Positions 3,819-25,345 are shown, numbered from the stretch's first letter. The stretch: 35,759 bases of DNA from Hyphochytrium catenoides (GCA_900088475.1 FLMG01002198.1:1-35759); one strand, 5' to 3'. Made by a program: numbers and translations. Notes: generated by a model not told the origin, from the letters alone.

Positions 3819-6800
3819 CTGCCATCTCATCAATTGCCCGTTATGGTGCCATTGTTTGTCACAGCAGCCTTCATGCCAGCCTTATGCGCCGGCTGTAGGA
3901 GGTGGCGGCGTAGGTGCTCGGATGGGTGCCAACCTAGGTACTACTCTTACTGATGGTTTCGACGCATGAGTAGCATTGGTATCAGTCTAAAACCAGCCTT
4001 AGGAATCACACATATACATTACTTTAGATCACTAAACCCGACGATGAGCAGCCTAGGTGCCATAACCTTGCACGCGAGCGCTACTCATTAGCTATTGTTC
4101 CAGCTTATATGTCAGTCTTCGTTGCCAGCCTAATGACAGAGGAGATAAGGAGTCCGAGGTACACCTAGGTGCCAGTCAAAAGGTGCTATTCGAGAGGCCA
4201 TCCTAAGTCCCATCCTTAGGCTAGATGATATTCTGTTTCACCAAGTTAGGTGAAAGCCTAGTAGGTGCCAACCTGAGTTGCCATCAGAGTTGTCATGTTA
4301 AGATCTGACCTGCTAGTTTTTTTGTGCCAGTCTACGTCGTGCCAGGATGCAATCTTAATTTACCTGGCTAAACGCCATCCAATATTACTGCCCTCATCCT
4401 CTTGGTGGAACACTAGGTGGCCGATATGATTGCCAGCTTAGTCAATTCGGTTACAAGGTGCTAGTAGCGTAGGTGCCACCATAGGTCCCAGCTTTAGAAA
4501 TAGCCTTTATCCGCCTTAGAAACCAACGACGGCGTCAGTCTCAGACTTGATAACCTAGCTGCCATCCTAGGAGCCTTCCTGGCAGCCGCCAGCTCTATAC
4601 CGAAATAAAGTGCAACCCAATAGGCCACCTGAGTAGGTCCACGCCTGATAAGGATTGTAACCCACGAGAAAAGGAAGGCCTTCCTGGGGTCCGTTGGCCT
4701 GATAGCTTGACAGACCACACCGCGATGAAGGCAAACAGGCAGAAGAAGACTGTCGCGAAAACTATTCAAAGCGACTTTCCTCCAAAGAGAGTGCTTTACG
4801 TAGATAATTAGCGAATCCTATGAACAGCAAGGGCAATCTGATTGAGAAAGGAAAAAGAGAAGAAAGAAGGCATAAGGGGTGAAGAGAAAGAGTAGGCCGC
4901 AAGACTCTCGAGGCAGTAGAGAGAAACGAGAAGAGGAAGGAAAAGGGTCCAGTCGGTGCTGACTGCAAGTGCCGGGATATATCCTCCCGCGCTTGGCATC
5001 TGCCTTTTAGTCTTGAGTTCTGTCTCCGGTATGCCTGCCAGTTGATACTTTCTATGGCCAAGTGTGCACCAGAGATGGACGAACGACGACTATACTAGCA
5101 AGTACCACACACAGATTAGCTAGGTGCCAGGTGTCCTGAGAAAGCCTGTCTAACCTTCTCTATTAGCATAAGTACCAGCCTGCTGTGTGGTCGACTGGAG
5201 CCAGGCTCGGCTGGAGTCGGACTAGGTGCCAGCTTCTATAGCAACCGGAGGGTGCCAGTCTAATACTGCTGAAGTTCGGACTTTGTACTACTGGAAGTCT
5301 GTCGCGCGCTTTCGCTGCACTAGGCCGTGCTGCTTATCTGCGCCACACCTTGCAGATGGAAGGTCTGATGGCGCTCCGAACTTCTTCGCTGGACACAAGG
5401 ACCGAAGCTCTTGGAGGCCTTCCTTCCTTCACGTTTCTTCTCCAAAGATCCTGCTTCTTCTCTCCCTTACTACTTCTACCTTACTTACCGTGTGTTGCAC
5501 TCTTATCTAAGGACTTAAGGGTGTAAGAGGTAGCTCATCAGTGGTGATAGCTCATAGGTAGAAACTTTGGTACTTTAACTATAAGAACTCTAGCCAAGAG
5601 CTTCATGAGCACTTGTCAGTTGATCAATTCATTCATACATCATTCTCCTACGAAGAGTAGAATCCAGCACTGCCTCTCCATCAGCACGCAACTAAAAAGT
5701 TTCAGCTCAGGTACCAGCGCAGCTTAGGTGCCAGTCTACGTCCCCGCTTAGTGTCAGCCTTCTGTGACGCGAATTCTATCTGATCCCGCTTGGTGCCAGC
5801 GATGGTTACTGCCTTGGTCCGAGCCTAGCTTCCCAGTCTCAGAGCCAGCAGTACGATCCAGCCTAGGTACCAGCCTTTGGGGGATTGTCATAACATCACA
5901 ATAGACAAAAAAGGAACATTGTCATCCGCAAATATGTAGGGCATTCTGGTGCGTAATAAGAGATGGAGATCCTTGCTCTTTCTCGATAAGCTTGGACCAG
6001 CACCGCTTCGGTCGGACGCAATCAAGCCCAGAAGCATGAGCACTGACGCTCTTTATACAGGCGGTACCATGCTCCAGCTTCAACACGAAGAGTCGTGTAC
6101 TTCCAACAGTAAGTAGTTGTTCAAGTAGAGTTGTTCACAAGCACCTTAGCCTTCCTTATCATACAGTTGGTGTCATCATGGTGCTAGCATATTAGCGCAC
6201 GTGTTTGTGTCAGTCCTCCCACTTTATGTAGCAATCTTTACAGAAAGTAGCGGCATCGTTTCTTCTTTCAAAGGGCAAGTAGTGTCGGTCTAAAGCAGCA
6301 TTGTTGGTCGGCTAAAAAAACAAGGGCTAGACACGTTAGTATAGGCTGATTTTACCTTGCGGTCGCATGGGCAAGACCAGACACAGAAGGCTGGCCTCGC
6401 ACCACTGCAAAGCGTGGTAATGTCTACAATCACGTGCTAACTCAAATCTATTGAGATCTGTAGTAGGTAACATGGCACCAGCTAGGAGCACCATTGATTT
6501 GTAAGGACAGACAAAGGGCAAGAGGAGGCAGAAAGTATTCCTCCCGTACAGGTAAGACAAAGGTGAGGATAGGAGCTCAGTGGTTGGCCGTAAGCTTTAT
6601 CTTCAAAATGAATACTGGCCTCGCCTAGGCATCCTCCAACCTTGTGCAATTGTTGTTGCCTCCAGCCTGCTGTCAACCTTTGGTGGTGCCAGATTATGGG
6701 CCAGGATAAGTGCCAACATAAGTGCCAAACAACATAGGTGCTAGCCTACGTTCCAGCCTTAATAGAGTATGTGCCAATACTTTAGGTGTTAGTCTAGGTA

Positions 6801-7672
6801 TCAAGCGGAGGTACTAGTAGCCGATGTATCAGCGTAGGCGTCAGGCTAGGTACCGCCATTGAAAGTAGTATTATACGTGACAATCTCAAATGACATCCTC
6901 CTAGATACGTGGCGTAGGTGTTAGGTTAACCGGCAGTGTTGATTGTCAGCCTACAACCTAGGTGTCCTCCTTCATGCCAGCCAGATTGCCTTGGTGCCGG
7001 TAGAACCCAAGCAATCTTGGCGTCGGCCCTACGTGCCAACGTAGGTGCCAATCTGGGTAATTTCTCGTCGTTCTAGTAGTCTACAGTGCTAGGTTAGGCG
7101 CAAAAAACTCTTCGTGCTAGCCTAGGTGCCATAAATCTCCTCCTTAGCGCTAGCCGTGATGGCCATAAGAAGTGCACCTTTAGGTACCAGTTTAGATACC
7201 ACCCTATGACGACGTACGCGCCTAGCTCCAGCAATTTAAAGTTGGCAGCCTTATTACATGGCAGCCTAGGTTGCAAAAGGCCATTGTAGGTGCCAACCTG
7301 GGTGCGTCTGGAGATGTTTTTGATGCCACTCTTGCTGCCAGCCTGGCTTGAAGCGTAAGCCTCAATCTCGATACCAGAGTAGAAGCTACGAGCCTACTAG
7401 AAGCCGGATTGGTCGATTTAGCCTGGTGGCAGCCGTAGTTGCCCACTTAGATGCCACCCAGACGTGTCCAACAGCTTAGATCTCAACCTTACTTGGCCTC
7501 CTTAGGTAAGCCCTGAGTAGGTGACCTAGGTGATTAATTCTATGTGCCAGTCTTAGCGCTGGACTTTGGGCCAGCATAATATATTTATAGTACCAGGATT
7601 AGTGGTGATCCATCCTCACCCTGCCTTGGTGTCAGCCCAAGTACCACCCTTAAGATCCCCCCCCCCCGGCAG

Positions 7673-8092
7673 AGTTGGTTGGAAGCTCTTCTTCATTGTG
7701 GTGCAAATAGCAGAATGAGATTAATGAAGATTATGAGCTCGAGCAGAGCTCAATGAACTAATGATCCCTTAGTTCTATAAAGCCTAAGTATGCAACGCTA
7801 TGAGAATGACATGCAAGAGAGAAAGCAGAGAGGAACACTCTTAGCAACGGGAGAGAGTAGAGAGTGTTTGGAAATGATTGAATGGTCACCAAGGTATTTA
7901 TCATCTCCAGACAAGAGAATCGGCAATAAATTGGTGGCTAGAAGGAAGGGAAGAAGTAAAGTCGGAAAGAGAAAAATGTTCAAGAAGCAAGAACAAATTT
8001 CTAGAGAAATTATTAGAAAGAAAGTAGAACAAGGAATCAAGAACAAGAATATTCCTTGCTATAGAGACCCCTGAAGAAAAGGGTTCTCAACA
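7673..8092 (-). mobile_element. Solo-LTR-like dispersed repeat, copy 2 (420 bp, inverted relative to copy 1)
   Basis: Reverse complement reads TGTTGAGAACCCTTTTCTTCAGGGGTCTCTATAGCAAGGAATATT...GAAGAGCTTCCAACCAACT, matching 3374-3818 with scattered substitutions and indels. Confidence 0.6.
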
Positions 8093-11000
8093 CTTACTTA
8101 ACACTAAGCAGCAGGTAGCAGCTTAAAAGATGCCAGCCCTTGAAACACTGTGGCGGGGGCTCGAACAACCTGGTGGACACCTACGATACGGGTGACACCA
8201 GTGTTAAGAACCAACCGGCACCAAGGATGACATCAGTGGCGGTCGAGATACCTAGACTGGTATCTACCTTTACGAGCTTCAGTTGTCAGTGTGATTGAGG
8301 CAGTAGATGCCAGCTAGCTATCGACCCCCTCGATGTCACCCTTGTTGCCGGCTTTGGAGACCACCAGGTTGTTCTACCTTACTTGTTGTCAGCCAAGGTA
8401 TAGCCCGGCGTTTGTTCCAGCAAGAAACCAGCTTATTGGTCAATAATCTACCTGCGTGCGCAGATGTCAGCCTAGGTGTCAGTCTCGTAGCAGCCTATTT
8501 GCCGCGGTACTTTGGTCCCAGACGTTAGGACTAGCCTAGCTAGTAGGTACCATTAGCACTGGTCGTTGACCATAGTCCTTCAGCAACGCCAGCCTGGCTG
8601 TCAGCCCTAGAGGTCAGCGTCAACCTAGTTGCCGGAGGAGCTGCCAGAAAGGTTCTACGCTTAGACCAGTCTACTACTTGTACCCCGCATTAATGATTGA
8701 CGCTAACCTTAAGCAAGACCAGCCTAGATGTCCGCTTAGGTATCAGCACTTCCTGCCGCACCCCCCAGACGGACACCAGCTGAGTAGTGTTAACCGAAAG
8801 GGACCAATTTCTGGCAAGGTAGAAGTTAGCCCTGCATGCTGCCAGGAGGAATATGCGCTTCAGTTTTGATGCAATTCTTCTCTTCAGCGGTTGGACCCTT
8901 TCGCCTGCTTGCATGGTGTTTGGAATGAAGGATGATATGGAAGAAGGGCTGAAAAAGAGCGAGCGAGACGGAGAACAGGGGAAGAGGAGGACTACTCAAG
9001 AGGTGCATGCAGAAGGGATCGAACAGACCACCGTAAAGGGTCTTAGAGCAAGAAAAAGAAGAAGAAACACAAGTCGGACATGGACAAGCACGACGAGAAC
9101 ATGCAAGAGCTCACAGGCTACGTATGAGCCTCCGACGAAGTGAAAGTGAGAGAAAGCAAGACTTGACCTAGAGCTAACTACCAGAGACCACCAGAAATAG
9201 AGCAAGAGTAATAAACGGTAGTAAATGAAAGAAAGCGCGGAATGCATGGTAAGGTGAGAAGTAGATCCGAGCGAGAGAGAGACAAAGACATTCTTGAGAG
9301 AGAGAGAGTGAGAAGAGAGAGACATCTAAGAAAGAGAGACATTTGGTGGGAGCTGGTGACGCGCATAGGCGAGGTTCAGTTACAGCTCTCAAGAGAGTAG
9401 AAAGAGACTAGACAGATCAGAAGAGGACTGTGAGCCAGAAAAAGAGGCAGCAGCAGCAAAAAAAGAGAGACAGAAGGATGTAGTGGAAAGCAACGAGAGC
9501 GAAGGGGAAAGGGGCGAGAAAATAGAGACAGACAGAGACCTGGTACAATTGATGATAGTTTTGTTAGCCCGTCCGAGATATGAGGACGCTAACATCATCG
9601 AGGCTAAAGAAAGAAAACAGAGCTATCTGTCTTCTCACTTCCTCTCTCTCTCTCCTTCTTACCTATGTATGTACCTCATCTCAATCTTGTGTCTCTCTTC
9701 TGCGCTCTTGCCGGCTTCGTCGCCCTCTCATATTTCCTCATGTGTCTATCTCGTTTGGACTATACTTCATTTTGTTATCGACTCTGCTCTCTGTTGAACC
9801 TCTTTGCTTCCAAGAACACAGCGCTTCACTTATATCGGGTCATCAAATGTGACCTCCCTCGTTGTCTCTATCTTCACTCTACCTGAAATCGATCCCCCAA
9901 GAGTGAGCAGTAAGGTTGTGACATGATCTATCGTCCTTGACTCTATGTCACGCTACCATAGAAAGGGACAGAGCGAAGTTAAACATAGTACGCCTTCGAT
10001 GCTATTTTGACGGCGGTATTGGGAGCAAAGCAGCGAGAGAGAGAGAATTGAGGAAGCCATGCCTGTATGAGGAGGAAAAGAATCAGAGAGGGTTAGCGAG
10101 ACTACTAGGAGAGAGACTGCAGAGAAGACGGAGTAGTGACCGAGCGATAACAACAGAAGAAGAGGAGAAAAGTGAGAGTGTGCATGTGTGAGAGAGAAGG
10201 AGACAAACAGACAAGCAGCAAGAGAGAAGAGGGGTAGGCGACAGGGACAAGAGTCAGCAGTCCAGTTTGCGCTACGGTGCCGGCGACAGGAAGCAAAAGA
10301 GCACTCAACCATCACAAGAGATTACGATGAAAGACGAAAGATGTTCGGAGACAAAGTGTCCCCGAGATACACGGGAGAATGATAAAAGGGATGAAGGAAA
10401 AGGACGGCGAGGGCGGGCGAGGAGGGGGAGCGAGCGTCAGAAGACTGAGGCTACAGAAAGGAAGAAATGGGCTAGCAGCGGGAGAGGAAAGAGGCGACAG
10501 GCATTTCTTTTGGAAGGGATCCTCACCGCCTTTAAAGCTAGTTTCCCTTGTTGGCACCCAAGTAGAGCATTACCAACACTGCTGGAAAGGGGAAGGGAGA
10601 GCAAAACTCATTAGGAGGAGACCGAAGGCACAAAGAAAAAGAGAGAGAGAAGGCAAGTTTAAAGCAGGAACAAGATGAGAAAGGGGGAGGAGAGAAAATT
10701 TAGAGAGAGCAGATAACAAGTAGAGGGCAAACCGACGGGAATGGGAGACAAGAGCAAGGAGAGAGGAAGAGAAACTGATGCCCACCACCACTTTTGAATG
10801 GACTACTAAGGGTCAAATTCCTATCGAGCGAGCGAAGAAAAAAGAAGTGATGCCATCGTTCCTCGCCCAACCTACTTGGGCATCAGGAAGAGCTAGGAAA
10901 AGGTAAGGGTTGATCCGCAACATGTTTTCCCCACGACGACGACGCCGAAGGTTTTGCACGTCTATTCTCCTGTCTACCCGCGTACGAGTTTCATGATGCA

Positions 11001-11325: not shown

Positions 11326-12588
11326 TCACTGTGGTGCCGGGATACAGTTCGGGCCATCTTCTACATAGCCTGTGTCACAGTGGCAGTGGTCCCCATGAAG
11401 ATGACCATGCCCACCGCACTCCTCTTCTTCGTCGTGAGGAGGCAACTCTGTTGGACCCGGAGCAGGAATGCAGGTGACTCCGACTGCAACATAACCTGGG
11501 CTACAGTCACAGTGATCATCGTGCCATGTGCCATGACCACTGCACTCTTCAATGACACAGCTAAGCCCGAGCGCCACATAGCCAGGCTCACAGTCACAGT
11601 GGTTGTCATGTAAGCTCCCATGCCCGCTACATTCCGCTTCTGGCTTAGGGAAGGCCCGAGTGGTCTTGTTGGCAGGGACGCACGTGAGTCCATCAGCTAC
11701 ATAGCCCGGGTCGCAGTGGCAGTGGTCACCATGAAGATGACCGTGTCCGCCGCACTCAGGTCCCTCTGTAGGGGTAGGGGAAGTACTCGTCGAAGGTGCT
11801 CCGCTTGGATTGGCAGTGGTAGGCTTAGGCGTGGCGGCTGGCACACAGCTGAGTCCATCAGCTACATAGCCCGGGTCACAGTCGCAGTGATCGCCGTGAA
11901 GATGTCCATGTCCGCCGCACTCAGGTCCCTCTGTAGGCGTAGGGGGAGTTCTAGTAGTGCTTTCTTTGTCTTCAGCCCTGCAACCTGGAACCCCTGTTCT
12001 CACAGTGCCGCAGTAAGAGCCATTGGGAAGTCCTTCCTGTGGTCCAGGGCAGTTGCCCTTGGGGAAGCCTCCAACACAGATAGGAATTGGGGCGCAGAAA
12101 GTATCGTAGTACTCTACTGACACCGGCAGCTGCCCTGGAGGGCACTTTACCCTTGCTTTCGAAGGAGATTCTACCACCCAAGGCCCCTCGGTTGCGATCT
12201 TTGGCGGCGGCGTACTGACCTCAGATGATGGTGCAATGGTGGTAGTACTTCTGGTGGGAGTAGGGGGCGACGTAGGTGATCGAGGAGATGGAGTTAAGGG
12301 CTGCACACTCGGTTTTTCGGCGGGTGGTGGAGGGGAAGGCGTGGTAGCATCTGCCATGATGGGAACACATGTGGTACCGGAAGGCTTATAACCAGCATCG
12401 CAGTGACAGTGGTCCCCGTGCATCCACCCGTGCCCTCCGCACTCATCTTTGTTTCCGCCCCCTCCTGCTAGCACACAGCGATCTCCTTCCCATGAACCTC
12501 CTTCTGCCAAGCAATCTTCGATACTCAAGCCCGTAGTCAGGGAGATGTTCAGCCCGGCTAGAAGCAGCACTGCGAATAGCCAGCGCAT
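11326..12588 (-). CDS. Secreted His/Cys-rich repeat protein (420 aa) with six 4-Cys His-EGF-like repeats and mucin-like P/T/S linkers; candidate zinc-scavenging protein
   Basis: The ORF track starts at a TTG (12912), but the ATG at 12588 (aaacgATG) opens a signal peptide MRWLFAVLLLAGLNISLTTG. Six C-x10-C-x-C-x10-C repeats (consensus ECGGHGHLHGDHCHCDPGYVADGLTCVP) lie at 12367-12441, 11845-11919, 11680-11754, 11557-11631, 11470-11544 and 11344-11418. A separate 6-Cys domain lies at 11980-12144. No C-terminal TM or GPI signal. Confidence 0.88.
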   Translation of the reverse strand: MRWLFAVLLLAGLNISLTTGLSIEDCLAEGGSWEGDRCVLAGGGGNKDECGGHGWMHGDHCHCDAGYKPSGTTCVPIMADATTPSPPPPAEKPSVQPLTPSPRSPTSPPTPTRSTTTIAPSSEVSTPPPKIATEGPWVVESPSKARVKCPPGQLPVSVEYYDTFCAPIPICVGGFPKGNCPGPQEGLPNGSYCGTVRTGVPGCRAEDKESTTRTPPTPTEGPECGGHGHLHGDHCDCDPGYVADGLSCVPAATPKPTTANPSGAPSTSTSPTPTEGPECGGHGHLHGDHCHCDPGYVADGLTCVPANKTTRAFPKPEAECSGHGSLHDNHCDCEPGYVALGLSCVIEECSGHGTWHDDHCDCSPGYVAVGVTCIPAPGPTELPPHDEEEECGGHGHLHGDHCHCDTGYVEDGPNCIPAPQ

Positions 12589-15500
12589 CGTTTGCTTGAT
12601 CCGGGTCCTTCCGCCCTTAGAGACTGCTGCAGACTGTCTTTTGCTGGTGAAACTTACTAATAACACTCTCTTAGAGTAGGAAAATTGAGGAATGAAAGAG
12701 GACGGTGACTCTGTGGGAAGGGGCATTCTTATTAACCTGACTACATAAGTCTCTGACGGATGGTGCTGTTTGTGGCTCTCCTCTTCTTCTTGTTTCTTTG
12801 TTCTCTTCAAACTCTTCCTAAGACTAAAACTGAGGGAGTCAAACAAGTCCAACGAAGGGGAATGATGACAAGGAAGGGGAGTTTGGAAAAACAGAGGAGT
12901 GTCTCTCAACAAAATGGTTTCTTATCCAACCAGCTTGTACGAGCAGGTTCAATAAAGAGAAGAAGCTACTTCCTCGTGGCACGATCCGACACGGACTTCT
13001 TGAATCCCTTTTAGCCATTATTAATCTTGCAAGAGGCGCTCAACGAGCGGATGCTGATGGAGCCAGGAAGGATGAAAGACGAAGAGGTGACTAGGTAGGA
13101 CAGGTAGCTTATGACGCGAGAGAAGGGCTCCTTCCTCACTCGCTTACCCTTCTGGCCTAGTTGGCGTCGTCAGATAAACTAATTAAGTCATGAGTTATGA
13201 AGGTCAGTAGTGGTGCTCAGTGTAGTGCTGGTTGCAAAATCCTCACGTCTTTCTGTTCTTTGACTTTTGTGGCCCTTCTTTTGCTTCCTGCCTCTCCCTC
13301 TCTTGCCTTCGCCAGTAGTGACAGTGCGATGATTGCAGCAGCGTACAAAAGAGTAAAGGGCACCTCCAGCAGCAGCTTTACCAGAACTACTGCTTATTTC
13401 TTCTACGACGAATGGCTCCATAATAGTTCCTCTATCGCTCGCCACCAGCCATCATCATCTACAAGCTCGAAAGTAGAGCAAATCGTATGGCGAAGATGCA
13501 AGCAGAGCACGTTCATCCAACAGTGTCGTGATGCCTCGTCACTTTCTTCTCCGGCTTTCGTTCTTCGGCGTCCTTCAACGCAAATTATCGCCTTCGGATA
13601 ATGGAGGTCTCAAGTGTACCTCCATTATTCTTCTTAATTAATACTTCCCTTCTCTCTCCATTAGCTCTTTCTTTTCTGGCTCCTCGCTCACTCTTTCTCT
13701 GTCCTCTTTCGCCTCCCCGCAAGTGGTGGTAGTTCAGGAGAAACGAAGCACCACAGCAGGATCCTTTCTTCGCCAGGATCAGTGGTGGTGACCTTCTCCT
13801 AACCAGGGAAAACTTGTCGGAGGAGGAGGAGGATTGCCATGAGGATTGCCCCCTTTTGGTTGTCGCCTCTTTTCCCTTTCTTTTTCTTCCTTCTGCATGG
13901 ACGAGAAGCGGGAAGAAGAAGACAGCCGGCGGAGGCCAAGGAAAAGGAGAGACTCACACTGCTGCTGTCCGTCTCAAAGAGTGCCAGGTTCTTATCCGAA
14001 GGCGCAGCATTCGCACGCTTTGTCATAATACTACAGTAGTGGCGTGGTAGTGCAGGTGGTGGTGGCAGGTGAAGAAGCCAGAGGAGGAGGACAAGGAAGG
14101 GCAACGGAGGAGGAGGACATGCCGATAGATCTGCAGGGAATAAAACAGTTTAGTTCCCTGTACAGCGGTACTCCGAGTGTCGCCATAGTTAATGTTATGA
14201 CGACCCAGCGGAAAAGATACAGCAACAACGCACTTTATTCCCCCTAGTTATCTCACAAGGGTGGGAGGCTTGCTGTACGGCGATGACGCATGTAGCGGCT
14301 AGCCTAAGTAGCTGTGATTAGGGACACGAGCTGAATAACATCAACAACGCACATTTGGCGATAGAGATCGTCATTATCCGAAGGGGAACCATCTTGCCTC
14401 TTCGGGTCCTTTCTCCTCCTCCCTCCTCCTCCCTTGCCGGCTGTTTGTGCTGCACTTCTTGGTGGTATCCGAAGGCGATGATGCCACAAGCTTTGGTTCT
14501 GATTCTCCACAACTCTCTCTCTCTNNNNNNNNNNNNNNNNNNNNNNNNNNNNNNNNNNNNNNNNNNNNNNNNNNCTCTCTCTCTCTCTTCTTTCCTCCTC
14601 CCGCTCTCTTGGTCTCTCCTCTCTCTATATTTTTCTCCTAACTTTCTCTTTCTTCTTTCTCTCTTTCTGTCGTTGTCTCTTTCGTCCCTTCGTGTTTTCT
14701 AAGCTTTCTCCTCGTTTTCTCTCTTTCTTCACTTTATCTCTCACTACTCTCTCCTTTCTCACTCTCTCTTCTCTTTCTCTCACTCTCTCTTCTTGCTCTC
14801 TCTCTCTCCTCTCTCTCTCCTCCTATGCCCCTCGTCATAACGAAGAAAAGTAATAAGAAGGTAACCTTGGCAGAGGGAAGCGAGCGGAAGAAGGAAGAAG
14901 GAGGCAGACTCCGAACACGTGCCCGAAGACCAAGCAGCGCGGTGAATCCTAAGGTTATTCTGCTGCAACACCGTCGGAGCAAAGCAAATCGAGAGAAGAG
15001 AATCGTTAGTTGTTGAATCACAATCAATGGCAGCGGGAGCAGACCCAATTTTGTCGATCGGCGGCACCAATGTGGCCGACCATTAGCACGTCAGAGATGA
15101 CCAAAGCTGCTCTTCAATCCCTTGCCTACAGCCATCAATCCGAAGGCAACATCTCCGTTGCGCTGAGAATTTGAAGGACCAGAGGGCTCCTCCGAAGAAC
15201 TAGAGTAAATCCTGAGGAGGGAGCGACACACACACGTGCATCCAATAGCTGTTTCTTAGATAGCTCCTGTCCTGTCAACATCAGATCAACAATATCCGTC
15301 ACTTCCCTTCTTCTATCCATTCTATTATCTTCAGCAGCTTATCCTGGTAGAGAGGACTAAACATGAGAGGAAAGCCAAGCGTCTACACTTGAGTTCCCTT
15401 TACAGCTTAGCATCGAAGAGCTTTCTGAGCTCTATTTACTAGAGAGAAGCGTTCTAGAGAACTGGTCATTGAGAAAGCGGCGCCGTCAGTTAGAGAAGCG

Positions 15501-15643
15501 AGTGAAGACTGCAAAAGTTAAGAGGAGCCAAGGTTTAGGAGCCTCTAGTTACCCGAAGACAACCACTATAGGTCTCTCTCGCACTTTTGCAGAAGGTCCG
15601 CCCCAGTGCCGCTTCGATCTATCACCTCTAATAGCTGTCAGTC

Positions 15644-17646
15644 ATGCCTGGGTCGGGATGTGCCCAGTCCTTCCTCCACGAGCTGCCGGCTTTCATACCT
15701 CGTCCACGGAAGCTCCTCCTTCTTATCTGTCTTTTAGTGAGTCTTCTGGACGCGGGCAGCGTTGGCTCCTGGCGCTCGCGAAGCTTTGCTGCGGCGGAGA
15801 CAGGGGAGCACCAGGAGCACGCACAGGAAGAGTGCAGCGGCCATGGCAGACTGCATGGCAACCACTGTCACTGCGAGAAGGGATATATCCCTAAAGGAAC
15901 ACTATGTCTTAGCAAGGACGAGGCGAATGCCAAGACCTCCTCGGAACTTCCCGCTGCTTGTCCTAGGCCAGCAGGAATGATAGAATTTGAGCGGTCAGCC
16001 CTGCTGCGGCTAGATCAGGGCTCCTACAGTCTCCAGTTAGCGGGCAATAACGCATCCATGGCGCTGTTTATAATCCCTCTGCCAGGTGCTAATGAAGAAA
16101 CCTTCCAGCAAGATCTGCAGAACTCGCGAGATGAAGCGATGGAGTTGCTCCAGGATGTGGCTTTACCACGGAAGGTTCTAAAGAAAGGAGAGATACTAGT
16201 GCCCTCAGAGAAGATTATGTACGTCATTCCCAGAAACGACGCCGAGAAGCTCCATCAAGAGAAAGAGAAGTGCCTGCAGACACCTGGCAATGTCTGGCAC
16301 GTGGATCATTGCGATGGTCCCGAGAGCGGCCACCGTTTGCGCGTGAGGCAGCGCCTTCTGCAGTCCTCGGTAGACTTCTCTTCCTTCAATCTCACAGTGT
16401 CTACCGCCTCGTACTATGCTCTGCACTTACAACTCGATGCAATGGAGATGTTCGGCATGAAGCTTGTCAACCCTATAACAGGAGAAGCCTTACCCATACT
16501 AGACTCTATTCGCTTGGACGCTGATCCCCCTGGTAGTAGCTCAGATCAGGCGGGCAGTGCTGGTACTGAACGGCTTGATGAGCAGAAGAACGAGGAAGGG
16601 CGCAGTGCCACCTTCTCGGACTGGTGGAAGACGCTAGTGGCTGTGGCTATTGTCACTCTAATCTCCGTCATCGGCGTGCTTCTGCTCATTTTCAAGTGGC
16701 AAAGACTGCAGAGGTTCATTAACCTAATGATCTCCATTGCCTCCGGCGCCCTCTTCTCAGCGTGTGCTATGCACATTCTCCCAGAGTCCATCGAGTTCTA
16801 TAACATCTATGGACAGATGTCGACGGAAGTGAGTCTTCTCTTCTCAACTGGCTTTTTGGTAGCTTTGATCGCAGAGATGACGGTCACGGTTGCACACAGC
16901 AAGCTTCAGCGGGGACATCACCATCACCATGCAGCACCAGCGGAAGCTCCGGTTCTGACGCCTCCTAGCGAGGATCGCTCTTCTCCTATAGTGAACCATA
17001 ACGGAACTACGGTGTTCGAGAAAGCGCCAGCAGAAAGAAGCTCTGTTGGGACTGGCGCTGTAGGAGGGTTGATGAAGGTTGACTGGGACGAGGTGAAGCC
17101 TGTTGCGTACGTCATCCTTCTTGGCGATCTCTTCCATAACTTTGTAGACGGAGTGCTCATTGCCACAGCCTTCTTGGCCTGTGACAGCAGTCTGGGAATC
17201 TCTGTCACTCTGTCTGCCATCCTGCATGAGATTCCACAGGAGTTTGCTGACTTTGTGGTGCTGGTCGATGCCGGCCTTTCTCCTCGTCAAGCCTTGCTGC
17301 TGAACCTGCTAAGCGGGTTGTCATCTTTCCTTGGGGCGATCATTGTTCTGCTTGCTGTGGCTATCAATCAACAGATGCTTGGGGGCCTTTTGGCAGTTGG
17401 GGCGGTAAGAGAGATTATCTGCTTTGGGGCTAATAGTAGACCTGCATCTTAGCATCTGTTCAACCTTTCCTTCCTGCTGTGCTTCCTTTCTTCTAGGGTG
17501 TGCTGATCTATATCGCAGCGACCGACTTACTGCCGCGTGTGGTGCATGGTGTTGGAAGCTGGAAAGACTTCTTCGTCAACATTATGCTCTTTCTAGTAGG
17601 CGGCGTTGCCGTGGGCCTGAGTACGCTGTATCACGTGCATTGCTGA
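15644..17646 (+). CDS. ZIP: ZIP (SLC39) family divalent metal (zinc) transporter, LIV-1-like, with long N-terminal ectodomain; exons 15644-17404 and 17497-17646, ~636 aa
   Basis: N-terminal hydrophobic signal. TM1-3 include SGALFSACAMHILPES. His loop GHHHHHA. TM4 is GDLFHNFVDG and TM5 is HEIPQEFADF. The phase-0 intron 17405-17496 restores the missing end of TM7 (GVLIYIAATDLLP) and TM8, ending LYHVHC-stop. Confidence 0.95.
17405..17496 (+). other. Spliceosomal intron (92 nt) in the ZIP gene
   Basis: Donor GTAAGA; polypyrimidine tract followed by TTCTAG acceptor. Splicing yields the conserved ZIP G-x-x-x-Y-I-A-x-x-D-L-L-P motif in frame. Confidence 0.9.
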
Positions 17647-20710: not shown

Positions 20711-22206
20711 GGAAAGCGCAGGGCGCCATTGTGGTCGAAGTTTGCTGGGCCCATTCTTTCTTCTTCTGGGCAACTAGTCCCTTCTCTGTCTTGTTTGCCA
20801 TGTGTCTGTTTCTGACTTTATGTCCTGCTGTCTTACCGTGCAGAGCAACTCTCTTTTTGTCCTTTTTAGCCGCGCCCACTTTGCTTCCCTCGCTGTGGCG
20901 GCGAAGCGGCCAATGAAGGGCTCTTCTTCCTCCTGATCATGGGCTAGTAGTCTAGGCTTCTATAGAGGGCGCATGGCCCTTCAAAACCAATAAGAAAGTG
21001 CTGTTGTCTGCGTTCCCCTCTCTTTTCCTCTTCCGATCTCTCACTCTCTCTCCCCTTTTAATCCGCCTTATTGTTAGCTTCGCAGCTCCGCTCTAGCTCC
21101 TCCCCTCCCATGCTCGGGTATCGCCAAATAGGAGCTGCTGGTGAATGCTTTGCTCTTAGTATCCCACAACGTCTCCGTCTAGCGCCCTACGGGCAGGCCA
21201 GCCGGTCTCCATCAGAGCTCATCAGTGAGGAGAAGCTGTGTCTCGGTGGAGCCCTAACAGAAGCCGGGTCGGGCAGACTGAGAGACTCTTGGCATTTCAC
21301 GAGGGCAATGGCATCCTTCTCTTCCCTCTCTTTCTCTCTCTCTCTTTCTGCTTGACGGTTCGTGCTCTCAGCAAACGATAGAAGCAGTTCGATTGCGGTC
21401 CAGGTCTCCTCGGCTGAGGCGAGCTATGGCTAGAGAGGCATCATACTCTCTCCAGTGCACGGAGACATACTTGGTGGCAGGCAAGAGAGACGACAAACGG
21501 GAGAGAGAGAGAATGAGCGAGAAATGAAAAAAGTCATTCATGGATTATTGTTCCTTTTAACAGGCGTCTCAAGCTCTTCGCGTCCCTAACTCTGTACCTT
21601 TGTAGCCAAAGCGAGTACTCCGCCGTGCAGCATCATCGCTCTTCTCTCTCTCTCTCCCCAACTCTATTTGTCACTCTGTGCCTTCTCCATCGCCCGCTTC
21701 TCGTCTGTTAGAACCTCCCTCCTATCCTACCTTGCTGTCTTCGAAGGGTTGGGGAGGAAGTGCGAGAGACACAGTTTCCAATTAACGGATTTTCTCTGGG
21801 AAGATAGATCTCTCCTCTCCATCGCGGCTCTCTACCCTTCCGCTCCCACCTGGCCACAGCGCCATCAACACCTCCTTGATCTTATCTATAGAACTAACGG
21901 TTCTGTCTGTCTCTGTGAGCGGTAACGAAGGACAGAAGAGACAGAGAGGGTGGTGTCATAAACCGGGACAGACAGAGATGAACGAGATGGAGAAATGGAA
22001 TAATAGAACTCAAGAAGGCAACGAGACAGAGCAGGTAAGAGGCTTGCCTGGGTACAGTGTTGCAATTCGCATCTTAGATGGAGAAACGGAATAATATAGG
22101 ATTAGGTTTTTTCGCTAACATTATGTTGGGGCTTGATAGAACTCAAGAAGGCTTGCCTAGACACAGAGAGGGAGAGACAGAGAGAGAGACAGAGAGAGAG
22201 AGAGAC

Positions 22207-22251
<45 letters not shown>

Positions 22252-22255
<4 letters not shown>

Positions 22256-22520
22256 CATGCGAGAGCGTTCAGGAGAGAGAGAGGCAGAGCAGCGGATCAT
22301 CCAAGGTGGAGGGGAGCAAGAGAGGAAGAGAAAGACAAACGGAGAGCAAGAAACAGAGGGAGAGAGAGAGAGAAACTAGAAGAGATACTAAAGGAAACGA
22401 GAGAAAGAAGACCACCCGAGACAGTGTCATGCCTTCCTCTTCATTTTCCTTCAGTCTCTCCTGACTCCTCACAGTGCTGGCCGCCAGGTTGTGGATAATA
22501 ACGTGGAAGAACAGACAAAA

Positions 22521-22596
<76 letters not shown>

Positions 22597-22830
22597 GGGA
22601 GCATGCGAGAGTGTTCAGGAGAGAGAGAGGCAGAGCAGCGGATCATCCAAGGTGGAGGGGAGCAAGAGAGGAAGAGAAAGACAAACGGAGAGCGAGAAAC
22701 AGAGGGAGAGAGAGAGAGAAACAAGAAGAGATACAAAAGGAAACTAGAGAAAGAAGACACCGAGACAGTGTCACGACTTCCTCTTCATTTTCCTTCGCCA
22801 GGTGGTGGATAATAACGTGGAAGAACAGAC

Positions 22831-22840
<10 letters not shown>
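22252..22840. repeat. Tandem duplication, ~346-bp period, units joined through (AG)n tracts
   Basis: GGAGCATGCGAGAG.GTTCAGGAGAGAGAGAGGCAGAGCAGCGGATCATCCAAGGTGGAGGGGAGCAAGAG... begins at 22252 and 22598. Both units end in GCCAGGT.GTGGATAATAACGTGGAAGAACAGACAAAA followed by (AG)n. Confidence 0.88.
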
Positions 22841-22884
<44 letters not shown>

Positions 22885-23479
22885 CTGAAGGAATGCTGAG
22901 GATGATGCGCCGGCGGCTGGGAAGAGAAGAAGAGCAGGAAAAGAGCTCCAGGAAGAGGTAAAGCCATATCTCTTTCCAACATCTCTTTCACGTGAGCAGA
23001 GGAACTTTTACTGAGGAATTCTTGTTCTCTGTCTTGCTGTTCAGTGCTCTCTCCTTCGGCCTCAGAGGCCCAAGTCGTGGACTGACACGTCCTCTCCCGC
23101 CCGCCCTGAGAGCAGGCGGGCAGCTGCCCAAATTTGATGAGCTCAATGCTGCGGCTTCTTTCTCTCTCTCTCTCTCTCTCTCTCTGTCTCGCCCTCTCTC
23201 TTTGTTTAGAAGCTTCGTCTCTTACCAGCAGGCTGCTCTCTCTCTCTCTGTTTCTCTCTGTTTGTCCTCGTTGACCTCCACATCATAGGAAAAGCAAGCT
23301 CTCTGTCGGAGAGAGAGAGAGGAGAGAGAACAGTTGAACAGCTTTTTCTTTTCTGTGAGAAAGGGAGATGATAAGTGTGAAAAGTGTGAGAGAGAGAGAG
23401 AGCACTTCTGTTGGGAGTTAAGGCGGAGCCTCTCCCATAGCTGCGGGTGTACAACTCAGAGCGGCAGGTCATCTCTCTG

Positions 23480-24462: not shown

Positions 24463-25345
24463 CCTCTCTCTCTCTCTCTCCCTCGCTCTCTCTCTCTCTC
24501 TCTCCCTCCCACTCTCACTCACTCTCTCTCTCTCTCTCTCTCTCTCTCGTTTCTCCTCTTGCACGCAAGCAACAAAACCAGTCTTCTAGCACCACCTGCG
24601 TCCTGGCTCCTCCTTTGGCAGCGACCAGCAGCTGCCCCGCCGCAGAATCAGAAGCTTGGAACAAAGAAAGGAGAGAGAGAGAGAGAGAAAGAGAAGAGAG
24701 AGAGAGGAGAACAGAGGCGAGGGAGAGAGCGCAGAGGTGAAACAAGCATAAGGACAAGACGGAAGGGAGAGAGAACAGACCGGTTGCAGAGAGAGAAGAA
24801 GGCGGCCATCGAGTTTCCTAAAAATACGACAGACGTCAGCGCTTTTACCTTCTTTCGCTCTCTCTCTCACTCTCTCTCTCTCTCNNNNNNNNNNNNNNNN
24901 NNNNNNNNNNNNNNNNNNNNNNNNNNNNNNNNNNNNNNNNNNNNNNNNCTCTCTCTCTCCCTTTCTTCCTCTCGTCTTCCTCTCCCTTTCTCTCTCTTTC
25001 TGTATCTATCTCTCTTTGGCTTGTATCTTTCTGTCCCCTCTCCCCCTCCTACTGTCACCTGATGGAACTCTCTCTTGGCCATCCTCTCTCCTCTGCTCTT
25101 CTGCTCTCTTCTTCCTCTTCTTCCACATCTGCCGCCAGAAGCGAAGACGCATCTGCCGCCGCAAGATGTCTACACGCAAGAGAGAGACGGACGAGACTAC
25201 ATAGAAATAAATTAGAGAGAGAGAGAAAGACGTCTCGCCGACGCAGCAAGAGAGAGAGAGAGAGACTGGCTACCAGATCTCCAGCAGTAATAGGAGAGAG
25301 AATAAAGACAGAGTGAGAGAGAGAGAAGAGAAAGAGACAAAAGCC

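What the first reader, a model, noticed from the sequence alone, without database searches (positions are those of the whole stretch)
11326..17646. Candidate new zincophore system: secreted His-EGF repeat protein head-to-head with a ZIP transporter carrying the same module
Seen in sequence: the two genes are divergently transcribed with ~3.05 kb between start codons and no credible gene between them. The secreted protein has six copies of EC[GS]GHGxxH[GD][DN]HC[HD]CxxGYxxxGxxC. The ZIP ectodomain has one copy with identical Cys spacing (EECSGHGRLHGNHCHCEKGYIPKGTLC, 15833-15907). Established: Candida albicans PRA1-ZRT1 and Aspergillus fumigatus aspf2-zrfC are divergent pairs of a secreted zinc-binding protein and a ZIP transporter with Cys/His ectodomain motifs. 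Inference: this locus is an independently evolved equivalent in a non-fungal eukaryote, where a multivalent secreted metal sponge hands zinc (or another divalent metal) to a co-regulated transporter through a shared module. I know of no description of such a pair, but could not search.
Basis: partly seen in the sequence, partly recalled or inferred. Interest (0 to 1): 0.93.

Follow-up and report, generated by a model that had tools for sequence, protein, structure and literature searches.

The report
Histidine-EGF zinc-scavenging gene pair
A stramenopile genome places a secreted protein with six histidine-studded mini-EGF modules back to back with a zinc-type (ZIP) transporter carrying the same module, and because that module sits in zinc-starvation gene clusters in many bacteria and is fused to ZIP transporters in three eukaryotic groups, the pair is a plausible non-fungal counterpart of the fungal zincophore system, still unproven by experiment.

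Summary
The sequence observation holds. A 420-aa secreted protein (12588..11326, minus strand) has six 4-Cys His-rich EGF modules. A 636-aa two-exon ZIP transporter (15644..17646, plus strand) has one module in its ectodomain. The start codons face away from each other across 3,055 bp with no recognisable gene between.

The N gap (14525-14574) lies in a (CT)n tract of the spacer, outside both coding sequences. No DNA contig bridges it, so the linkage rests on the scaffold only.

The zinc reading is partly supported:
- Of 44 bacterial loci with the module, 29 carry Zur-regulon-type genes (COG0523/CobW, ZnuABC, Fur-family, DUF1826, S14 paralogue), at a median 603 bp. Only 1 of 12 module-less control loci does.
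- The module is fused to ZIPs of different subfamilies in oomycetes, Tetraselmis and Sphaeroforma.
- In 4 of 4 oomycete genomes, the orthologous ZIP is preceded by a different secreted His-rich protein.
- The rest of the ZIP ectodomain is a fold shared with extra domains of ZnuA-, CobW- and RcnA-annotated proteins.

Against it:
- The exact pair is seen only here.
- The secreted protein's modules resemble myxobacterial modules (up to 96%) more than the neighbouring ZIP's (52-64%).
- No RNA or metal-binding data exist.

No Pfam or NCBIfam family and no paper was found for the module. An earlier first-reader note of this scan (s1-360167) flagged the same module on this window.

The parts
11326..12588 (-). 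Single-exon gene for a 420-aa secreted protein. It has a signal peptide, six His-EGF modules, Pro/Thr/Ser-rich linkers and one stramenopile-type Cys-rich domain. There is no C-terminal anchor.
   Evidence: ORF and translation; Pfam EGF_Teneurin 2.6e-12. Between samples X1 and X2 the coding sequence shows substitutions only, no indels.
12529..12588 (-). Predicted signal peptide MRWLFAVLLLAGLNISLTTG.
   Evidence: Read from the translation. The cleavage site is judged by eye (inference). Differences between samples are denser in the roughly 300 bp upstream of 12588 (8) than across the 1,263-bp coding sequence (7), which favours this ATG as the start.
12367..12441 (-). His-EGF module 1 (CGGHGWMHGDHCHCDAGYKPSGTTC).
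   Evidence: The best outside match is 80%, to the module of a gammaproteobacterial MAG protein (P0006) that lies beside Fur-ZnuABC genes.
11974..12147 (-). Central Cys-rich domain (aa 148-205), homologous to a repeat of secreted oomycete (Globisporangium/Pythium) proteins.
   Evidence: BLASTP against P0022 gives 51-52% identity, E 4e-13. P0148-P0152 consist of this repeat.
11344..11919 (-). His-EGF modules 2 to 6, at 11845-11919, 11680-11754, 11557-11631, 11470-11544 and 11344-11418. Modules 4 and 5 almost abut, separated by four residues (VIEE).
   Evidence: Module 3 is 96% identical to a Myxococcus faecalis module (P0002). Read depth and a joint at 11800-11949 hint at a collapsed or polymorphic copy number.
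12589..15643 (.). 3,055-bp divergent spacer holding the presumed promoters and 5' UTRs of both genes.
   Evidence: No Pfam hit for its two ORFs tested, including the longest, 134 aa, and no Rfam family or tRNA. Samples differ here by 8 indels, several not multiples of three.
13591..14475 (.). Cluster of four copies of the 10-mer TATCCGAAGG (13591-13600 minus strand; 13993-14002, 14375-14384 and 14466-14475 plus strand). Candidate shared cis-element.
   Evidence: Four matches in the window, all in the spacer, against 0.04 expected. The flanks are not conserved, so this is not a repeat element. Any function is inference.
14525..14574 (.). Assembly gap (N run) inside a (CT)n microsatellite.
   Evidence: No contig of runs X1-X3 bridges 14525-14824.
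15644..17404 (+). ZIP transporter exon 1 (aa 1-587): signal peptide, ectodomain and the first six of the eight expected transmembrane helices.
   Evidence: Pfam Zip 2e-31; oomycete orthologues at 42-46% identity over 90-96% of the length; AF2 model; match to BbZIP.
15833..15907 (+). His-EGF module of the ZIP ectodomain (C64-C88: CSGHGRLHGNHCHCEKGYIPKGTLC).
   Evidence: Residues C64, G66, G68, H71, G72, H74, C75, H76, C77, G80, Y81, G85 and C88 are invariant in 23 orthologues. Two beta-hairpins are predicted, at 68-71/74-77 and 81-84/87-90.
15977..16513 (+). Ectodomain core (aa ~112-290): a beta-sandwich with helices, carrying the invariant motifs W218-H-x-D-H-C-D224, H230 and Y258-A-x-H-x-Q263.
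   Evidence: pLDDT mostly above 90. Fold matches to extra domains of RcnA-, CobW- and ZnuA-annotated proteins, to haptophyte ZIPs and to small Myxococcota proteins. No solved structure matches.
17135..17251 (+). Transport-site motifs: TM4 HNFVDG (aa 498-503) and TM5 HEIPQEFAD (aa 528-536).
   Evidence: H498, N499, F500, V501, D502, G503, H528, E529, P531, Q532, E533 and D536 are invariant among the orthologues.
17405..17496 (+). 92-nt gt..ag intron.
   Evidence: Read from the sequence. The phase and the exon-2 translation continue the oomycete alignment, and several database models of orthologues read through an intron at the same place.
17497..17646 (+). ZIP exon 2 (49 aa plus stop; last two transmembrane helices; C-terminus ...LYHVHC).
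   Evidence: It aligns with the oomycete C-termini ...LHHVHC.

Best explanation
The two genes encode parts of one extracellular zinc-acquisition system built on a shared, previously unnamed metal-binding module.

The module. It is a teneurin/tenascin-type EGF that has lost one disulfide. Its first beta-hairpin (H-G-x-x-H-G-D-H-C-H-C-D) places His4, His8, His11, His/Asp13 and Asp15 on one face and the two cysteines on the other. This is a carbonic-anhydrase-like His-x-His plus cross-strand His arrangement, suited to Zn(II).

The secreted protein. It strings six such sites on flexible linkers that are probably O-glycosylated, and so acts as a multivalent zinc collector outside the cell or in the wall.

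The transporter. It is a ZIP closest to the LIV-1 branch. At the tip of its ectodomain it presents one module, followed by a second domain of a fold that recurs in zinc-uptake proteins. Zinc collected outside is passed to, or concentrated at, this ectodomain and imported.

Regulation. Both genes are probably driven from the shared 3-kb spacer under zinc limitation.

Shown: the anatomy, the conservation, and the association of the module with zinc genes and ZIPs.

Inferred: metal binding and metal specificity, co-regulation, and hand-off between the two proteins.
For: 1. Bacterial neighbourhoods, first sample. Seven of 8 module proteins looked up lie beside Fur-ZnuA-ZnuC-ZnuB, COG0523/CobW, FolE2, an S14 paralogue, DUF1826 or a TonB receptor.

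2. Bacterial neighbourhoods, species-level scan. In 56 species-level loci, 29 of the 44 that carry the module have such markers. The median distance is 603 bp, and 22 lie within 1.5 kb. Only 1 of 12 module-less loci from the same taxa has one (Fisher p = 6e-4). These gene types are established members of the Zur regulon (PMC2770081).

3. Fusions to ZIPs. The module is fused to ZIPs in at least 18 of the 22 aligned oomycete proteins, where it is invariant. It is also fused to a Tetraselmis ZIP of a different subfamily, to a Sphaeroforma arctica ZIP and to a metagenomic ZIP.

4. Oomycete synteny. In Pythium insidiosum, P. oligandrum, Phytophthora cinnamomi and P. ramorum, the orthologous ZIP is immediately preceded by a small secreted protein. 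That protein carries an (HD)n or (HE)n tract and a GPI-like tail, and it is head-to-head with the ZIP in Phytophthora. In P. cinnamomi an Nramp gene lies next door.

5. Module conservation. Over 292 distinct modules: H4 77%, G5 97%, H8 87%, H11 65%, H/D13 89%, D15 86%. The hairpin register comes from two AF2 models.

6. Ectodomain core. Its fold relatives are annotated as ZnuA, CobW, RcnA or ZIP proteins.

7. Possible shared control. A 10-mer occurs four times in the spacer and nowhere else in the window.
Against: - The exact pairing of a secreted multi-module protein with a ZIP was found only in this window.
- The secreted protein's modules are 52-64% identical to the ZIP's module but 68-96% identical to bacterial ones. 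Nothing in the sequences points to a specific partner fit.
- The Myxococcus and Corallococcus multi-module HAF/DUF3466 proteins are the closest module relatives of the secreted protein. They are mostly not in zinc loci (L003, L047, L053, L054, L058, L060, L065).
- The 3-kb spacer is about ten times longer than the roughly 335-375 bp head-to-head spacers in Phytophthora. This weakens the case for one bidirectional promoter.
- No contig bridges the gap.
- No RNA run was listed.
- No coordinates were available to measure His-His distances.
- Metal specificity is unknown. ZIP8/14-type transporters also carry Fe, Mn and Cd. HupE/UreJ and Nramp genes appear in some neighbourhoods.
Confidence: 0.55

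Rival explanations
1. Same module and same metal, but no partnership. Both proteins bind zinc through His-EGF modules and act independently. The secreted protein would be a wall-bound zinc store or buffer, or would withhold zinc from competitors. The ZIP module would serve only the transporter's own capture or sensing. Adjacency would give at most loose co-expression.
For: The modules of the two genes are not each other's nearest relatives. The spacer is 3 kb long. Bacterial module proteins occur with several different uptake systems (ZnuABC, TonB receptors, COG0523), so the module is a generic zinc handle and not a partner-specific one.
Against: The oomycete orthologues keep a secreted His-rich protein directly upstream of this ZIP in 4 of 4 genomes, even though that protein is unrelated. 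This points to selection for the pairing itself. The fungal Pra1-Zrt1 system sets a precedent for docking of such a partner (PMC5751234).
Confidence: 0.2
2. The metal is not zinc, or not only zinc. The pair would handle nickel, cobalt, copper, manganese or iron, or would protect against metal excess.
For: His-rich sites also bind Ni, Co and Cu. HupE_UreJ_2 lies next to a module gene in L011, and Nramp lies next to the P. cinnamomi ZIP. The best AFDB fold hit for the ectodomain core is annotated as RcnA, a Ni/Co efflux protein. ZIP8/14-type transporters have broad specificity (general knowledge).
Against: The dominant bacterial neighbours are the zinc-specific set: ZnuABC with a Fur-family regulator, COG0523, FolE2, an S14 paralogue and DUF1826.
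Confidence: 0.1
3. Chance neighbours. The secreted protein would be an adhesive or cell-wall mucin-like protein whose EGF modules are structural. It would only happen to lie beside a ZIP that carries a related module.
For: Language-model look-alikes of the secreted protein are oomycete 'carbohydrate-binding' and 'cyst germination specific acidic repeat' clusters, with low scores of 0.72-0.74. The central domain belongs to an oomycete secreted repeat family of unknown function. The pair is seen only once.
Against: The five ligand-type positions are conserved from bacteria to eukaryotes, and 66% of bacterial module loci are zinc loci. This is hard to reconcile with a purely structural EGF. The module is rare: an exhaustive search with the secreted protein (modules plus central domain) gave only 181 representative hits in all, many of them through the central domain alone. 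Two module genes side by side is therefore unlikely by chance.
Confidence: 0.08
4. Scaffolding artefact. The two genes lie on different contigs that were joined wrongly across the N gap, and they are not neighbours in the genome.
For: No contig from three DNA runs bridges 14525-14824. CT-rich tracts are common in this window, so similar flanks prove little.
Against: Both edges of the gap are the same (CT)n repeat on the same strand, as expected when an assembler breaks inside one microsatellite. Both samples break at the same place.
Confidence: 0.07

Closest known systems
Fungal zincophore locus: Candida albicans PRA1-ZRT1 and Aspergillus fumigatus aspf2-zrfC
   Same: A secreted metal-binding protein and a ZIP importer are encoded side by side and transcribed divergently. 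The ZIP has a Cys/His-bearing N-terminal ectodomain. The proposed logic is scavenge outside, then deliver to the transporter (PMC5751234).
   Different: Neither component is homologous. The secreted protein has no Pra1-type domain (no such Pfam hit). The ZIP is not in the fungal-specific Zrt1 cluster; it is closest to LIV-1-type ZIPs. Here both partners carry the same module, which the fungal pair does not. Co-regulation and docking are shown in fungi and untested here.
Teneurin/tenascin-type EGF repeats (Pfam EGF_Teneurin PF23106, EGF_TEN PF25024)
   Same: The C-S/G-G-H-G ... C-x-C-x-x-G-Y ... C skeleton, the two-hairpin fold and the tandem arrangement. The Pfam hit is above its threshold for the secreted protein.
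   Different: There are four cysteines instead of six, because the C1-C3 disulfide is lost. The position of C3 and its neighbours is replaced by a conserved His/Asp set. The genomic context is zinc uptake, not cell adhesion.
LIV-1-type ZIP transporters with large ectodomains (ZIP4, ZIP8/14, ZIP6/10, ZIP12)
   Same: The transmembrane core has the HNFxDG and HExPxExxD motifs and a His-rich cytosolic loop, and the nearest structural neighbours are annotated ZIP8/12/6/10. As in those proteins, a large N-terminal ectodomain is thought to help capture zinc.
   Different: The ectodomain is unrelated to the helix-rich and PAL-motif ectodomain of ZIP4 (no Pfam hit). It consists of a His-EGF module plus a beta-sandwich that has no solved relative. 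The TM5 motif reads HEIPQEFAD, not HEXPHEXGD.
Bacterial Zur-regulon periplasmic or surface zinc-binding accessories (ZinT, the His-rich loop of ZnuA and similar)
   Same: His-rich extracytoplasmic proteins encoded beside ZnuABC, COG0523 or Fur-family genes. The bacterial His-EGF lipoproteins share this context.
   Different: No sequence relation. The His-EGF lipoprotein family matches no Pfam or NCBIfam model beyond weak EGF hits, and no paper was found for it.
Oomycete elicitin-like GPI-anchored proteins with His/Asp tracts, encoded upstream of the orthologous ZIP
   Same: They occupy the same position relative to the same ZIP. They are secreted and His-rich.
   Different: They belong to an unrelated protein family that looks elicitin-like to the language model (score 0.91). 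They are probably membrane- or wall-anchored through GPI, whereas the protein here is free, and they have no His-EGF module.

Membership tests
EGF-like domain, teneurin/tenascin type | Sequence match to the family profile above the curated threshold. | tested here: met
   For the secreted protein, PF23106 EGF_Teneurin scores 47 bits against a 24.3-bit cut-off, in six stretches. The single ZIP module scores only 14 bits, below the cut-off.
EGF-like domain, teneurin/tenascin type | Six cysteines forming the C1-C3, C2-C4 and C5-C6 disulfides. | tested here: not met
   Each module has only four cysteines, with spacing C-x10-C-x-C-x9-C. By alignment with the CSGHG...CxCxxGY skeleton, C1 and C3 are the missing ones. 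That assignment is inference.
EGF-like domain, teneurin/tenascin type | Two consecutive beta-hairpins. | tested here: met
   DSSP strands at 68-71/74-77 and 81-84/87-90 in two AF2 models, with pLDDT about 70-85.
ZIP (SLC39) metal transporters | Pfam Zip profile match above the curated threshold. | tested here: met
   PF02535 scores 109.9 bits against a 35.1-bit cut-off. Matches to BbZIP by sequence and by fold.
ZIP (SLC39) metal transporters | Metal-site motifs in TM4 (H-N-x-x-D/E-G) and TM5 (H/Q-E/D-x-P-x-E). | tested here: met
   HNFVDG at aa 498-503 and HEIPQEFAD at aa 528-536, invariant among 23 orthologues.
LIV-1 subfamily of ZIPs | The HEXPHEXGD signature in TM5. | tested here: not met
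   The motif reads HEIPQEFAD, with the second His replaced by Gln and Gly by Ala. The structural neighbours are nonetheless ZIP8/12/6/10. The protein is best described as LIV-1-like, not as a strict member.
Fungal Pra1-Zrt1 zincophore system | The secreted partner belongs to the Pra1/Aspf2 family. | tested here: not met
   No Pra1-type Pfam hit. Only EGF-type hits were found.
Fungal Pra1-Zrt1 zincophore system | The ZIP belongs to the fungal-specific Zrt1/ZrfC cluster. | tested here: not met
   All 33 sequence relatives with E <= 0.001 were oomycete or unnamed metagenomic ZIPs; no fungal sequence appeared. Nearest by fold are LIV-1-type ZIPs. The Zrt1 cluster is reported as fungal-specific (PMC5751234).
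Fungal Pra1-Zrt1 zincophore system | Divergent, syntenic gene pair sharing an intergenic region. | tested here: inconclusive
   The pair is divergent, with a 3,055-bp spacer on the scaffold. No contig bridges the spacer's gap. No second genome has the same pair.
Fungal Pra1-Zrt1 zincophore system | Co-induction of both genes by zinc limitation, and binding of the secreted protein to the transporter. | not testable with these tools
   No RNA run was listed.
Zur-regulon-associated His-EGF proteins of bacteria (unnamed family proposed here) | The module C-x2-[HN]-G-x2-H-x2-H-C-[HD]-C-x2-G-[YF]. | tested here: met
   All six modules of the secreted protein and the ZIP module fit the pattern. About 100 of 114 database relatives carry it.
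Zur-regulon-associated His-EGF proteins of bacteria (unnamed family proposed here) | Location next to zinc-homeostasis genes. | tested here: met
   Here the neighbour is a ZIP. In bacteria, 29 of 44 module loci have such neighbours, against 1 of 12 control loci.

The most novel reading that the evidence does not exclude
The His-EGF module is an unrecognised, cross-kingdom extracellular zinc-binding domain. Bacteria would use it in Zur-controlled scavenging lipoproteins. Eukaryotes would have fused it repeatedly to ZIP importers. In this stramenopile, a six-module secreted protein and the module-bearing ZIP would form a true protein zincophore-receptor pair that recognise each other through module-module or module-ectodomain contacts bridged by zinc. 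That would be a second, independently evolved zincophore system outside fungi.
Probability: 0.3. Interest if true: 0.88.

Novelty: new variant of a known kind. Interest (0 to 1): 0.72.

Why it matters
Protein zincophores with a dedicated ZIP receptor are known only from fungi, where they matter for growth under host-imposed zinc starvation.

If this reading holds, it would have three consequences:
- It defines a compact, easily expressed zinc-binding module of about 25 residues, shared by Myxococcota, Bradymonadia, oomycetes, a green alga and an ichthyosporean.
- It gives testable roles to a family of unannotated bacterial lipoproteins in Zur-type loci.
- It gives a testable role to the conserved but unstudied ectodomain of a ZIP found in oomycetes that are plant and animal pathogens.

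It would also show that coupling a secreted metal collector to a cognate ZIP arose more than once, with interchangeable collectors: His-EGF repeats here, and elicitin-like His-rich proteins in oomycetes.

Tried and rejected
- RNA evidence: no RNA run was listed for the ZIP gene. Two further attempts met a busy server. Only DNA runs were returned, so co-expression could not be tested.
- Gap bridging: none of the listed contig pieces from the three DNA runs crosses the microsatellite.
- Literature: full-text searches for the motif strings found nothing. Searches for a ZIP with an EGF-like domain in oomycetes, for Zur regulon with EGF, for zincophores in stramenopiles, for Myxococcus Zur, and for Phytophthora ZIP with His-rich elicitin-like proteins found no description of the module or the pair.
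- Is the ZIP ectodomain core homologous to the central domain of the bacterial two-module lipoproteins? The profile-profile comparison aligns only the module. Rejected at the sequence level.
- Solved structures for the ectodomain core: Foldseek and VIA-align found nothing convincing, with Z below 5.
- A gene hidden in the spacer: no Pfam hit for its ORFs, no Rfam family and no tRNA.
- The spacer 10-mer in oomycete loci: not enriched there.
- Other copies of the module gene in this genome: the scan's notes hold none, which means little.
- Local duplication as the source of the shared module: rejected by the module identities.
- A eukaryotic orthologue of the secreted protein: none among the best 150 of 181 hits from an exhaustive search.
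- His-His distances could not be measured because model coordinates are not exposed. The same-face argument rests on the strand register only.

Full report
**What is in the sequence**

The minus-strand ORF 11326..12912 is best started at ATG 12588. This gives a 420-aa protein with an N-terminal signal peptide (MRWLFAVLLLAGLNISLTTG), no C-terminal anchor, and long Pro/Thr/Ser linkers.

It has six modules of the form C-x2-H-G-x2-H-x2-H-C-[HD]-C-x2-G-Y-x6-C, at aa 50, 224, 279, 320, 349 and 391. Pfam reads them as teneurin-type EGF: PF23106 scores 47 bits against a 24.3-bit cut-off, in six stretches. The DNA copies are 65-87% identical, so these are old repeats.

Between modules 1 and 2 lies a Cys-rich domain (aa 148-205). 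It is 51-52% identical to a repeat of secreted Pythium/Globisporangium proteins.

On the plus strand, 15644-17404 plus 17497-17646, joined over a 92-nt gt..ag intron, encode a 636-aa ZIP transporter (Pfam Zip 109.9 bits). Its ectodomain carries one module, C64-C88, at 15833-15907.

The start codons are 3,055 bp apart and point away from each other. The only discrepancy is that the 27-aa peptide it quotes begins at 15827, not 15833.

**The gap**

The N run 14525-14574 lies in a (CT)n microsatellite in the middle of the spacer. It touches neither coding sequence, so reading frame is not at stake.

Continuity could not be verified. Contigs from three DNA runs of the same organism stop at 14524 in CTCT... 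and restart at 14825. Both edges of the gap are the same repeat on the same strand, which fits one microsatellite broken by the assembler. The linkage is nevertheless scaffold-level only. I give a misjoin about 7%.

The same call showed that two samples differ by eight indels in the spacer and by none in the two coding sequences. This supports the gene models and argues against a coding gene in most of the spacer. The spacer ORFs are at most 134 aa and have no Pfam hit. There is no Rfam family or tRNA. No RNA run was listed.

Extra depth and a 'goes back 148-150' joint at 11800-11949 suggest the module array may be collapsed or variable in copy number.

**What the module is**

By its skeleton (C-S/G-G-H-G ... 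C-x-C-x-x-G-Y ... C) it is a tenascin/teneurin EGF that has lost the C1-C3 disulfide.

I collected 292 distinct modules using only the Cys spacing and G-[YFW] as anchors. The non-Cys positions that stand out are His4 (77%, otherwise mostly Asn), Gly5 (97%), His8 (87%), His11 (65%), His/Asp13 (89%) and Asp15 (86%).

Two AF2 models place residues 68-71 and 74-77 of the ZIP in a tight hairpin with a two-residue G-N/G-D turn. In such a hairpin, positions 4, 6 and 8 of one strand and 11, 13 and 15 of the other face the same side. The two cysteines (12 and 14) face the opposite side, towards their disulfide partners.

The consensus module GHGHLHGDHCHCD would thus show five His and one Asp on one face. 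This includes a His-x-His pair beside a cross-strand His, the geometry of the classic carbonic-anhydrase zinc site. This step is inference from the strand register, because I could not measure distances.

**Evidence that the module belongs to zinc acquisition**

Relatives of the secreted protein are overwhelmingly bacterial (Myxococcota, Bradymonadia, various MAGs). About 100 of 114 carry the strict module.

I looked up eight of them. Seven sit in neighbourhoods typical of the zinc-starvation (Zur) regulon:
- directly upstream of Fur-ZnuA-ZnuC-ZnuB (P0007), or 2 kb from it (P0006);
- among three COG0523/CobW genes and a TonB receptor in Nannocystis punicea (P0072);
- divergent from a Fur-family gene and followed by cobW (P0038);
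- divergent from FolE2 (P0051);
- between an S14 paralogue, DUF1826 and cobW (P0058);
- between a TonB receptor, HupE/UreJ and cobW (P0105).

A scan of one genome per species returned 56 loci. I searched them with marker proteins taken from the first loci. Of the 44 loci that carry the module, 29 have COG0523, ZnuA/B, a Fur-family gene, DUF1826 or the S14 paralogue in the fetched flank. The median distance is 603 bp. Only 1 of 12 loci that matched the family's central domain but lack a module has such a marker (Fisher p = 6e-4). These gene types are the recognised members of the Zur regulon (PMC2770081).

There are exceptions. Most Myxococcus/Corallococcus HAF (DUF3466) proteins with four to six modules are not in such loci, although the Archangium ones are.

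No Pfam or NCBIfam model covers the module specifically or the bacterial lipoprotein family. No paper containing the motif or describing it was found.

**Evidence from eukaryotic ZIPs**

The ZIP has orthologues throughout Pythium, Phytophthora and Hyaloperonospora, at 42-46% identity over 90-96% of the length. They share the same intron site and C-terminus. In the 23-sequence alignment the module residues C64, G66, G68, H71, G72, H74, C75, H76, C77, G80, Y81, G85 and C88 are invariant.

The module also heads three other ZIPs:
- a Tetraselmis ZIP of another subfamily, with only 26% identity in TM1-3 and different transport motifs;
- a Sphaeroforma arctica ZIP that also has the Zip EF-hand ectodomain;
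- one metagenomic ZIP.

Fusion of this module to ZIPs has therefore happened, or been kept, in stramenopiles, green algae and holozoans.

The transmembrane core has HNFVDG and HEIPQEFAD. It resembles ZIP8/12/6/10 in fold searches and BbZIP among solved structures. It is LIV-1-like but does not meet the strict HEXPHEXGD signature.

**The rest of the ectodomain**

Residues ~112-290 are modelled with pLDDT mostly above 90, as a beta-sandwich with helices. They carry the invariant motifs W-H-x-D-H-C-D, H230 and Y-A-x-H-x-Q.

No solved structure matches. Among predicted structures the nearest are:
- an extra domain of an RcnA-annotated permease;
- CobW-family proteins;
- ZnuA-family binding proteins from bacteria and Thermoplasmatota;
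- haptophyte ZIPs;
- small standalone Myxococcota and haptophyte proteins, with TM by hit 0.60-0.64 and rmsd 2.2 Å.

TM-scores are modest. The convergence of annotations on zinc proteins is a lead, not proof. It suggests that both parts of the ectodomain are metal-handling domains.

**Synteny**

In Pythium insidiosum, P. oligandrum, Phytophthora cinnamomi and P. ramorum, the gene immediately upstream of the orthologous ZIP encodes a small secreted Cys-rich protein. It has an (HD)n or (HE)n tract and a hydrophobic, GPI-like tail. In Phytophthora it is head-to-head with the ZIP, about 335-375 bp away. Pythium has two paralogues. P. cinnamomi adds an Nramp gene.

These proteins look elicitin-like to a language model (score 0.91) and have no His-EGF module. 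The ZIP thus keeps a secreted His-rich neighbour while the identity of that neighbour changes. This is the best indirect argument that the pairing in this window is functional and not accidental.

- The secreted protein's architecture (six modules plus the stramenopile Cys-rich domain) appears in none of the best 150 of 181 hits of an exhaustive search of 1.84 billion representatives. Each hit has either the modules or the central domain, never both. The pair is therefore a single case.
- The secreted modules are 52-64% identical to the ZIP's module but 68-96% identical to bacterial modules. The shared module reflects common family membership and is not evidence of a fitted pair.
- The spacer is about ten times longer than in Phytophthora.
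- Metal, regulation and hand-off are all untested.

One small positive point: the 10-mer TATCCGAAGG occurs four times within 900 bp of the spacer and nowhere else in the 35.8-kb window, against 0.04 expected. Its flanks are unrelated, as expected for a transcription-factor site. It is absent from the oomycete spacers.

**Organism**

Notes from other windows of this genome call it a stramenopile. The 42-46% identity to all oomycete orthologues, the shared intron and the shared oomycete-type Cys-rich domain fit a lineage near, but outside, the sampled oomycetes. I did not establish the species.

The same notes list two further head-to-head ZIP pairs in this genome, one with a COG0523 gene and one with a multicopper oxidase. 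I could not check them.

**Verdict**

The module is very likely a zinc-acquisition domain; I put that at about 0.8. The two genes are probably part of one zinc-uptake system; the overall statement gets 0.55. A true zincophore-receptor hand-off remains a hypothesis, at about 0.3.

In kind it is a secreted metal collector beside a ZIP, which is known from fungi. The parts are unrelated to the fungal ones, and the module itself appears undescribed. I therefore class it as a new variant of a known kind, with interest 0.72.

Noticed in passing
window 13591-14475: The 10-mer TATCCGAAGG occurs four times (one on the minus strand, three on the plus strand), all within the divergent spacer and nowhere else in the window. 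The expectation is 0.04. The flanks are not conserved. It is a candidate transcription-factor site.
   Followed up: partly
window 11800-11950: Contig depth is two to three times that of the neighbouring sequence, and a 'goes back 148-150' joint appears in two DNA runs. The tandem His-EGF array may hold more copies than the assembly shows, or may vary between strains. One variant changes HCDC to HCHC in module 2.
   Followed up: partly
L002:9117-9665 (-), L013:5083-5628 (-), L001:8695-9267 (+) and 7654-8154 (-), L012:4919-5440 (+) and 3765-4223 (-): In four oomycete genomes the orthologous ZIP is preceded by small secreted Cys-rich, elicitin-like proteins. Most have (HD)n or (HE)n tracts and a GPI-like tail. 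In Phytophthora cinnamomi an Nramp gene (L002:7169-8903) lies next to them. This looks like a conserved oomycete metal-uptake locus that seems undescribed.
   Followed up: partly
window 15977-16513 (ZIP aa ~112-290): The ectodomain core is a confidently modelled beta-sandwich with the invariant motif W-H-x-D-H-C-D. It has no Pfam family and no solved relative. Its predicted-structure relatives are extra domains of ZnuA-, CobW- and RcnA-annotated proteins and of haptophyte ZIPs. It may be a second unrecognised metal-binding domain.
   Followed up: partly
L014-L036 and alignment A2: A family of roughly 240-330-aa lipoproteins in Myxococcota and Bradymonadia has the layout module, central domain (DYATCGTC ... 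C-x-A-H-G-D-H-x-H-C), module. It has no Pfam or NCBIfam model and usually lies beside COG0523, DUF1826 or Fur-family genes.
   Followed up: partly
P0252 (Sphaeroforma arctica XP_014160175.1): An ichthyosporean ZIP combines variant His-EGF modules, a DHDHNHDHEEE tract and the Zip EF-hand ectodomain. The module therefore also occurs on a holozoan ZIP.
   Followed up: no
window 25313-26689 (+): This ORF matches Pfam 'PRA1 family protein', which is the prenylated Rab acceptor family. It is unrelated to the Candida zincophore Pra1, and the shared name is a coincidence.
   Followed up: no
window 2001-3000, 10001-11000, 22001-23000, 28001-30000: These are strongly strand-skewed purine or pyrimidine tracts, with GC skew up to 0.42 and AT skew up to 0.51. 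They are of the same kind as the (CT)n tract that holds the assembly gap. Such tracts probably break short-read assemblies of this genome often.
   Followed up: no
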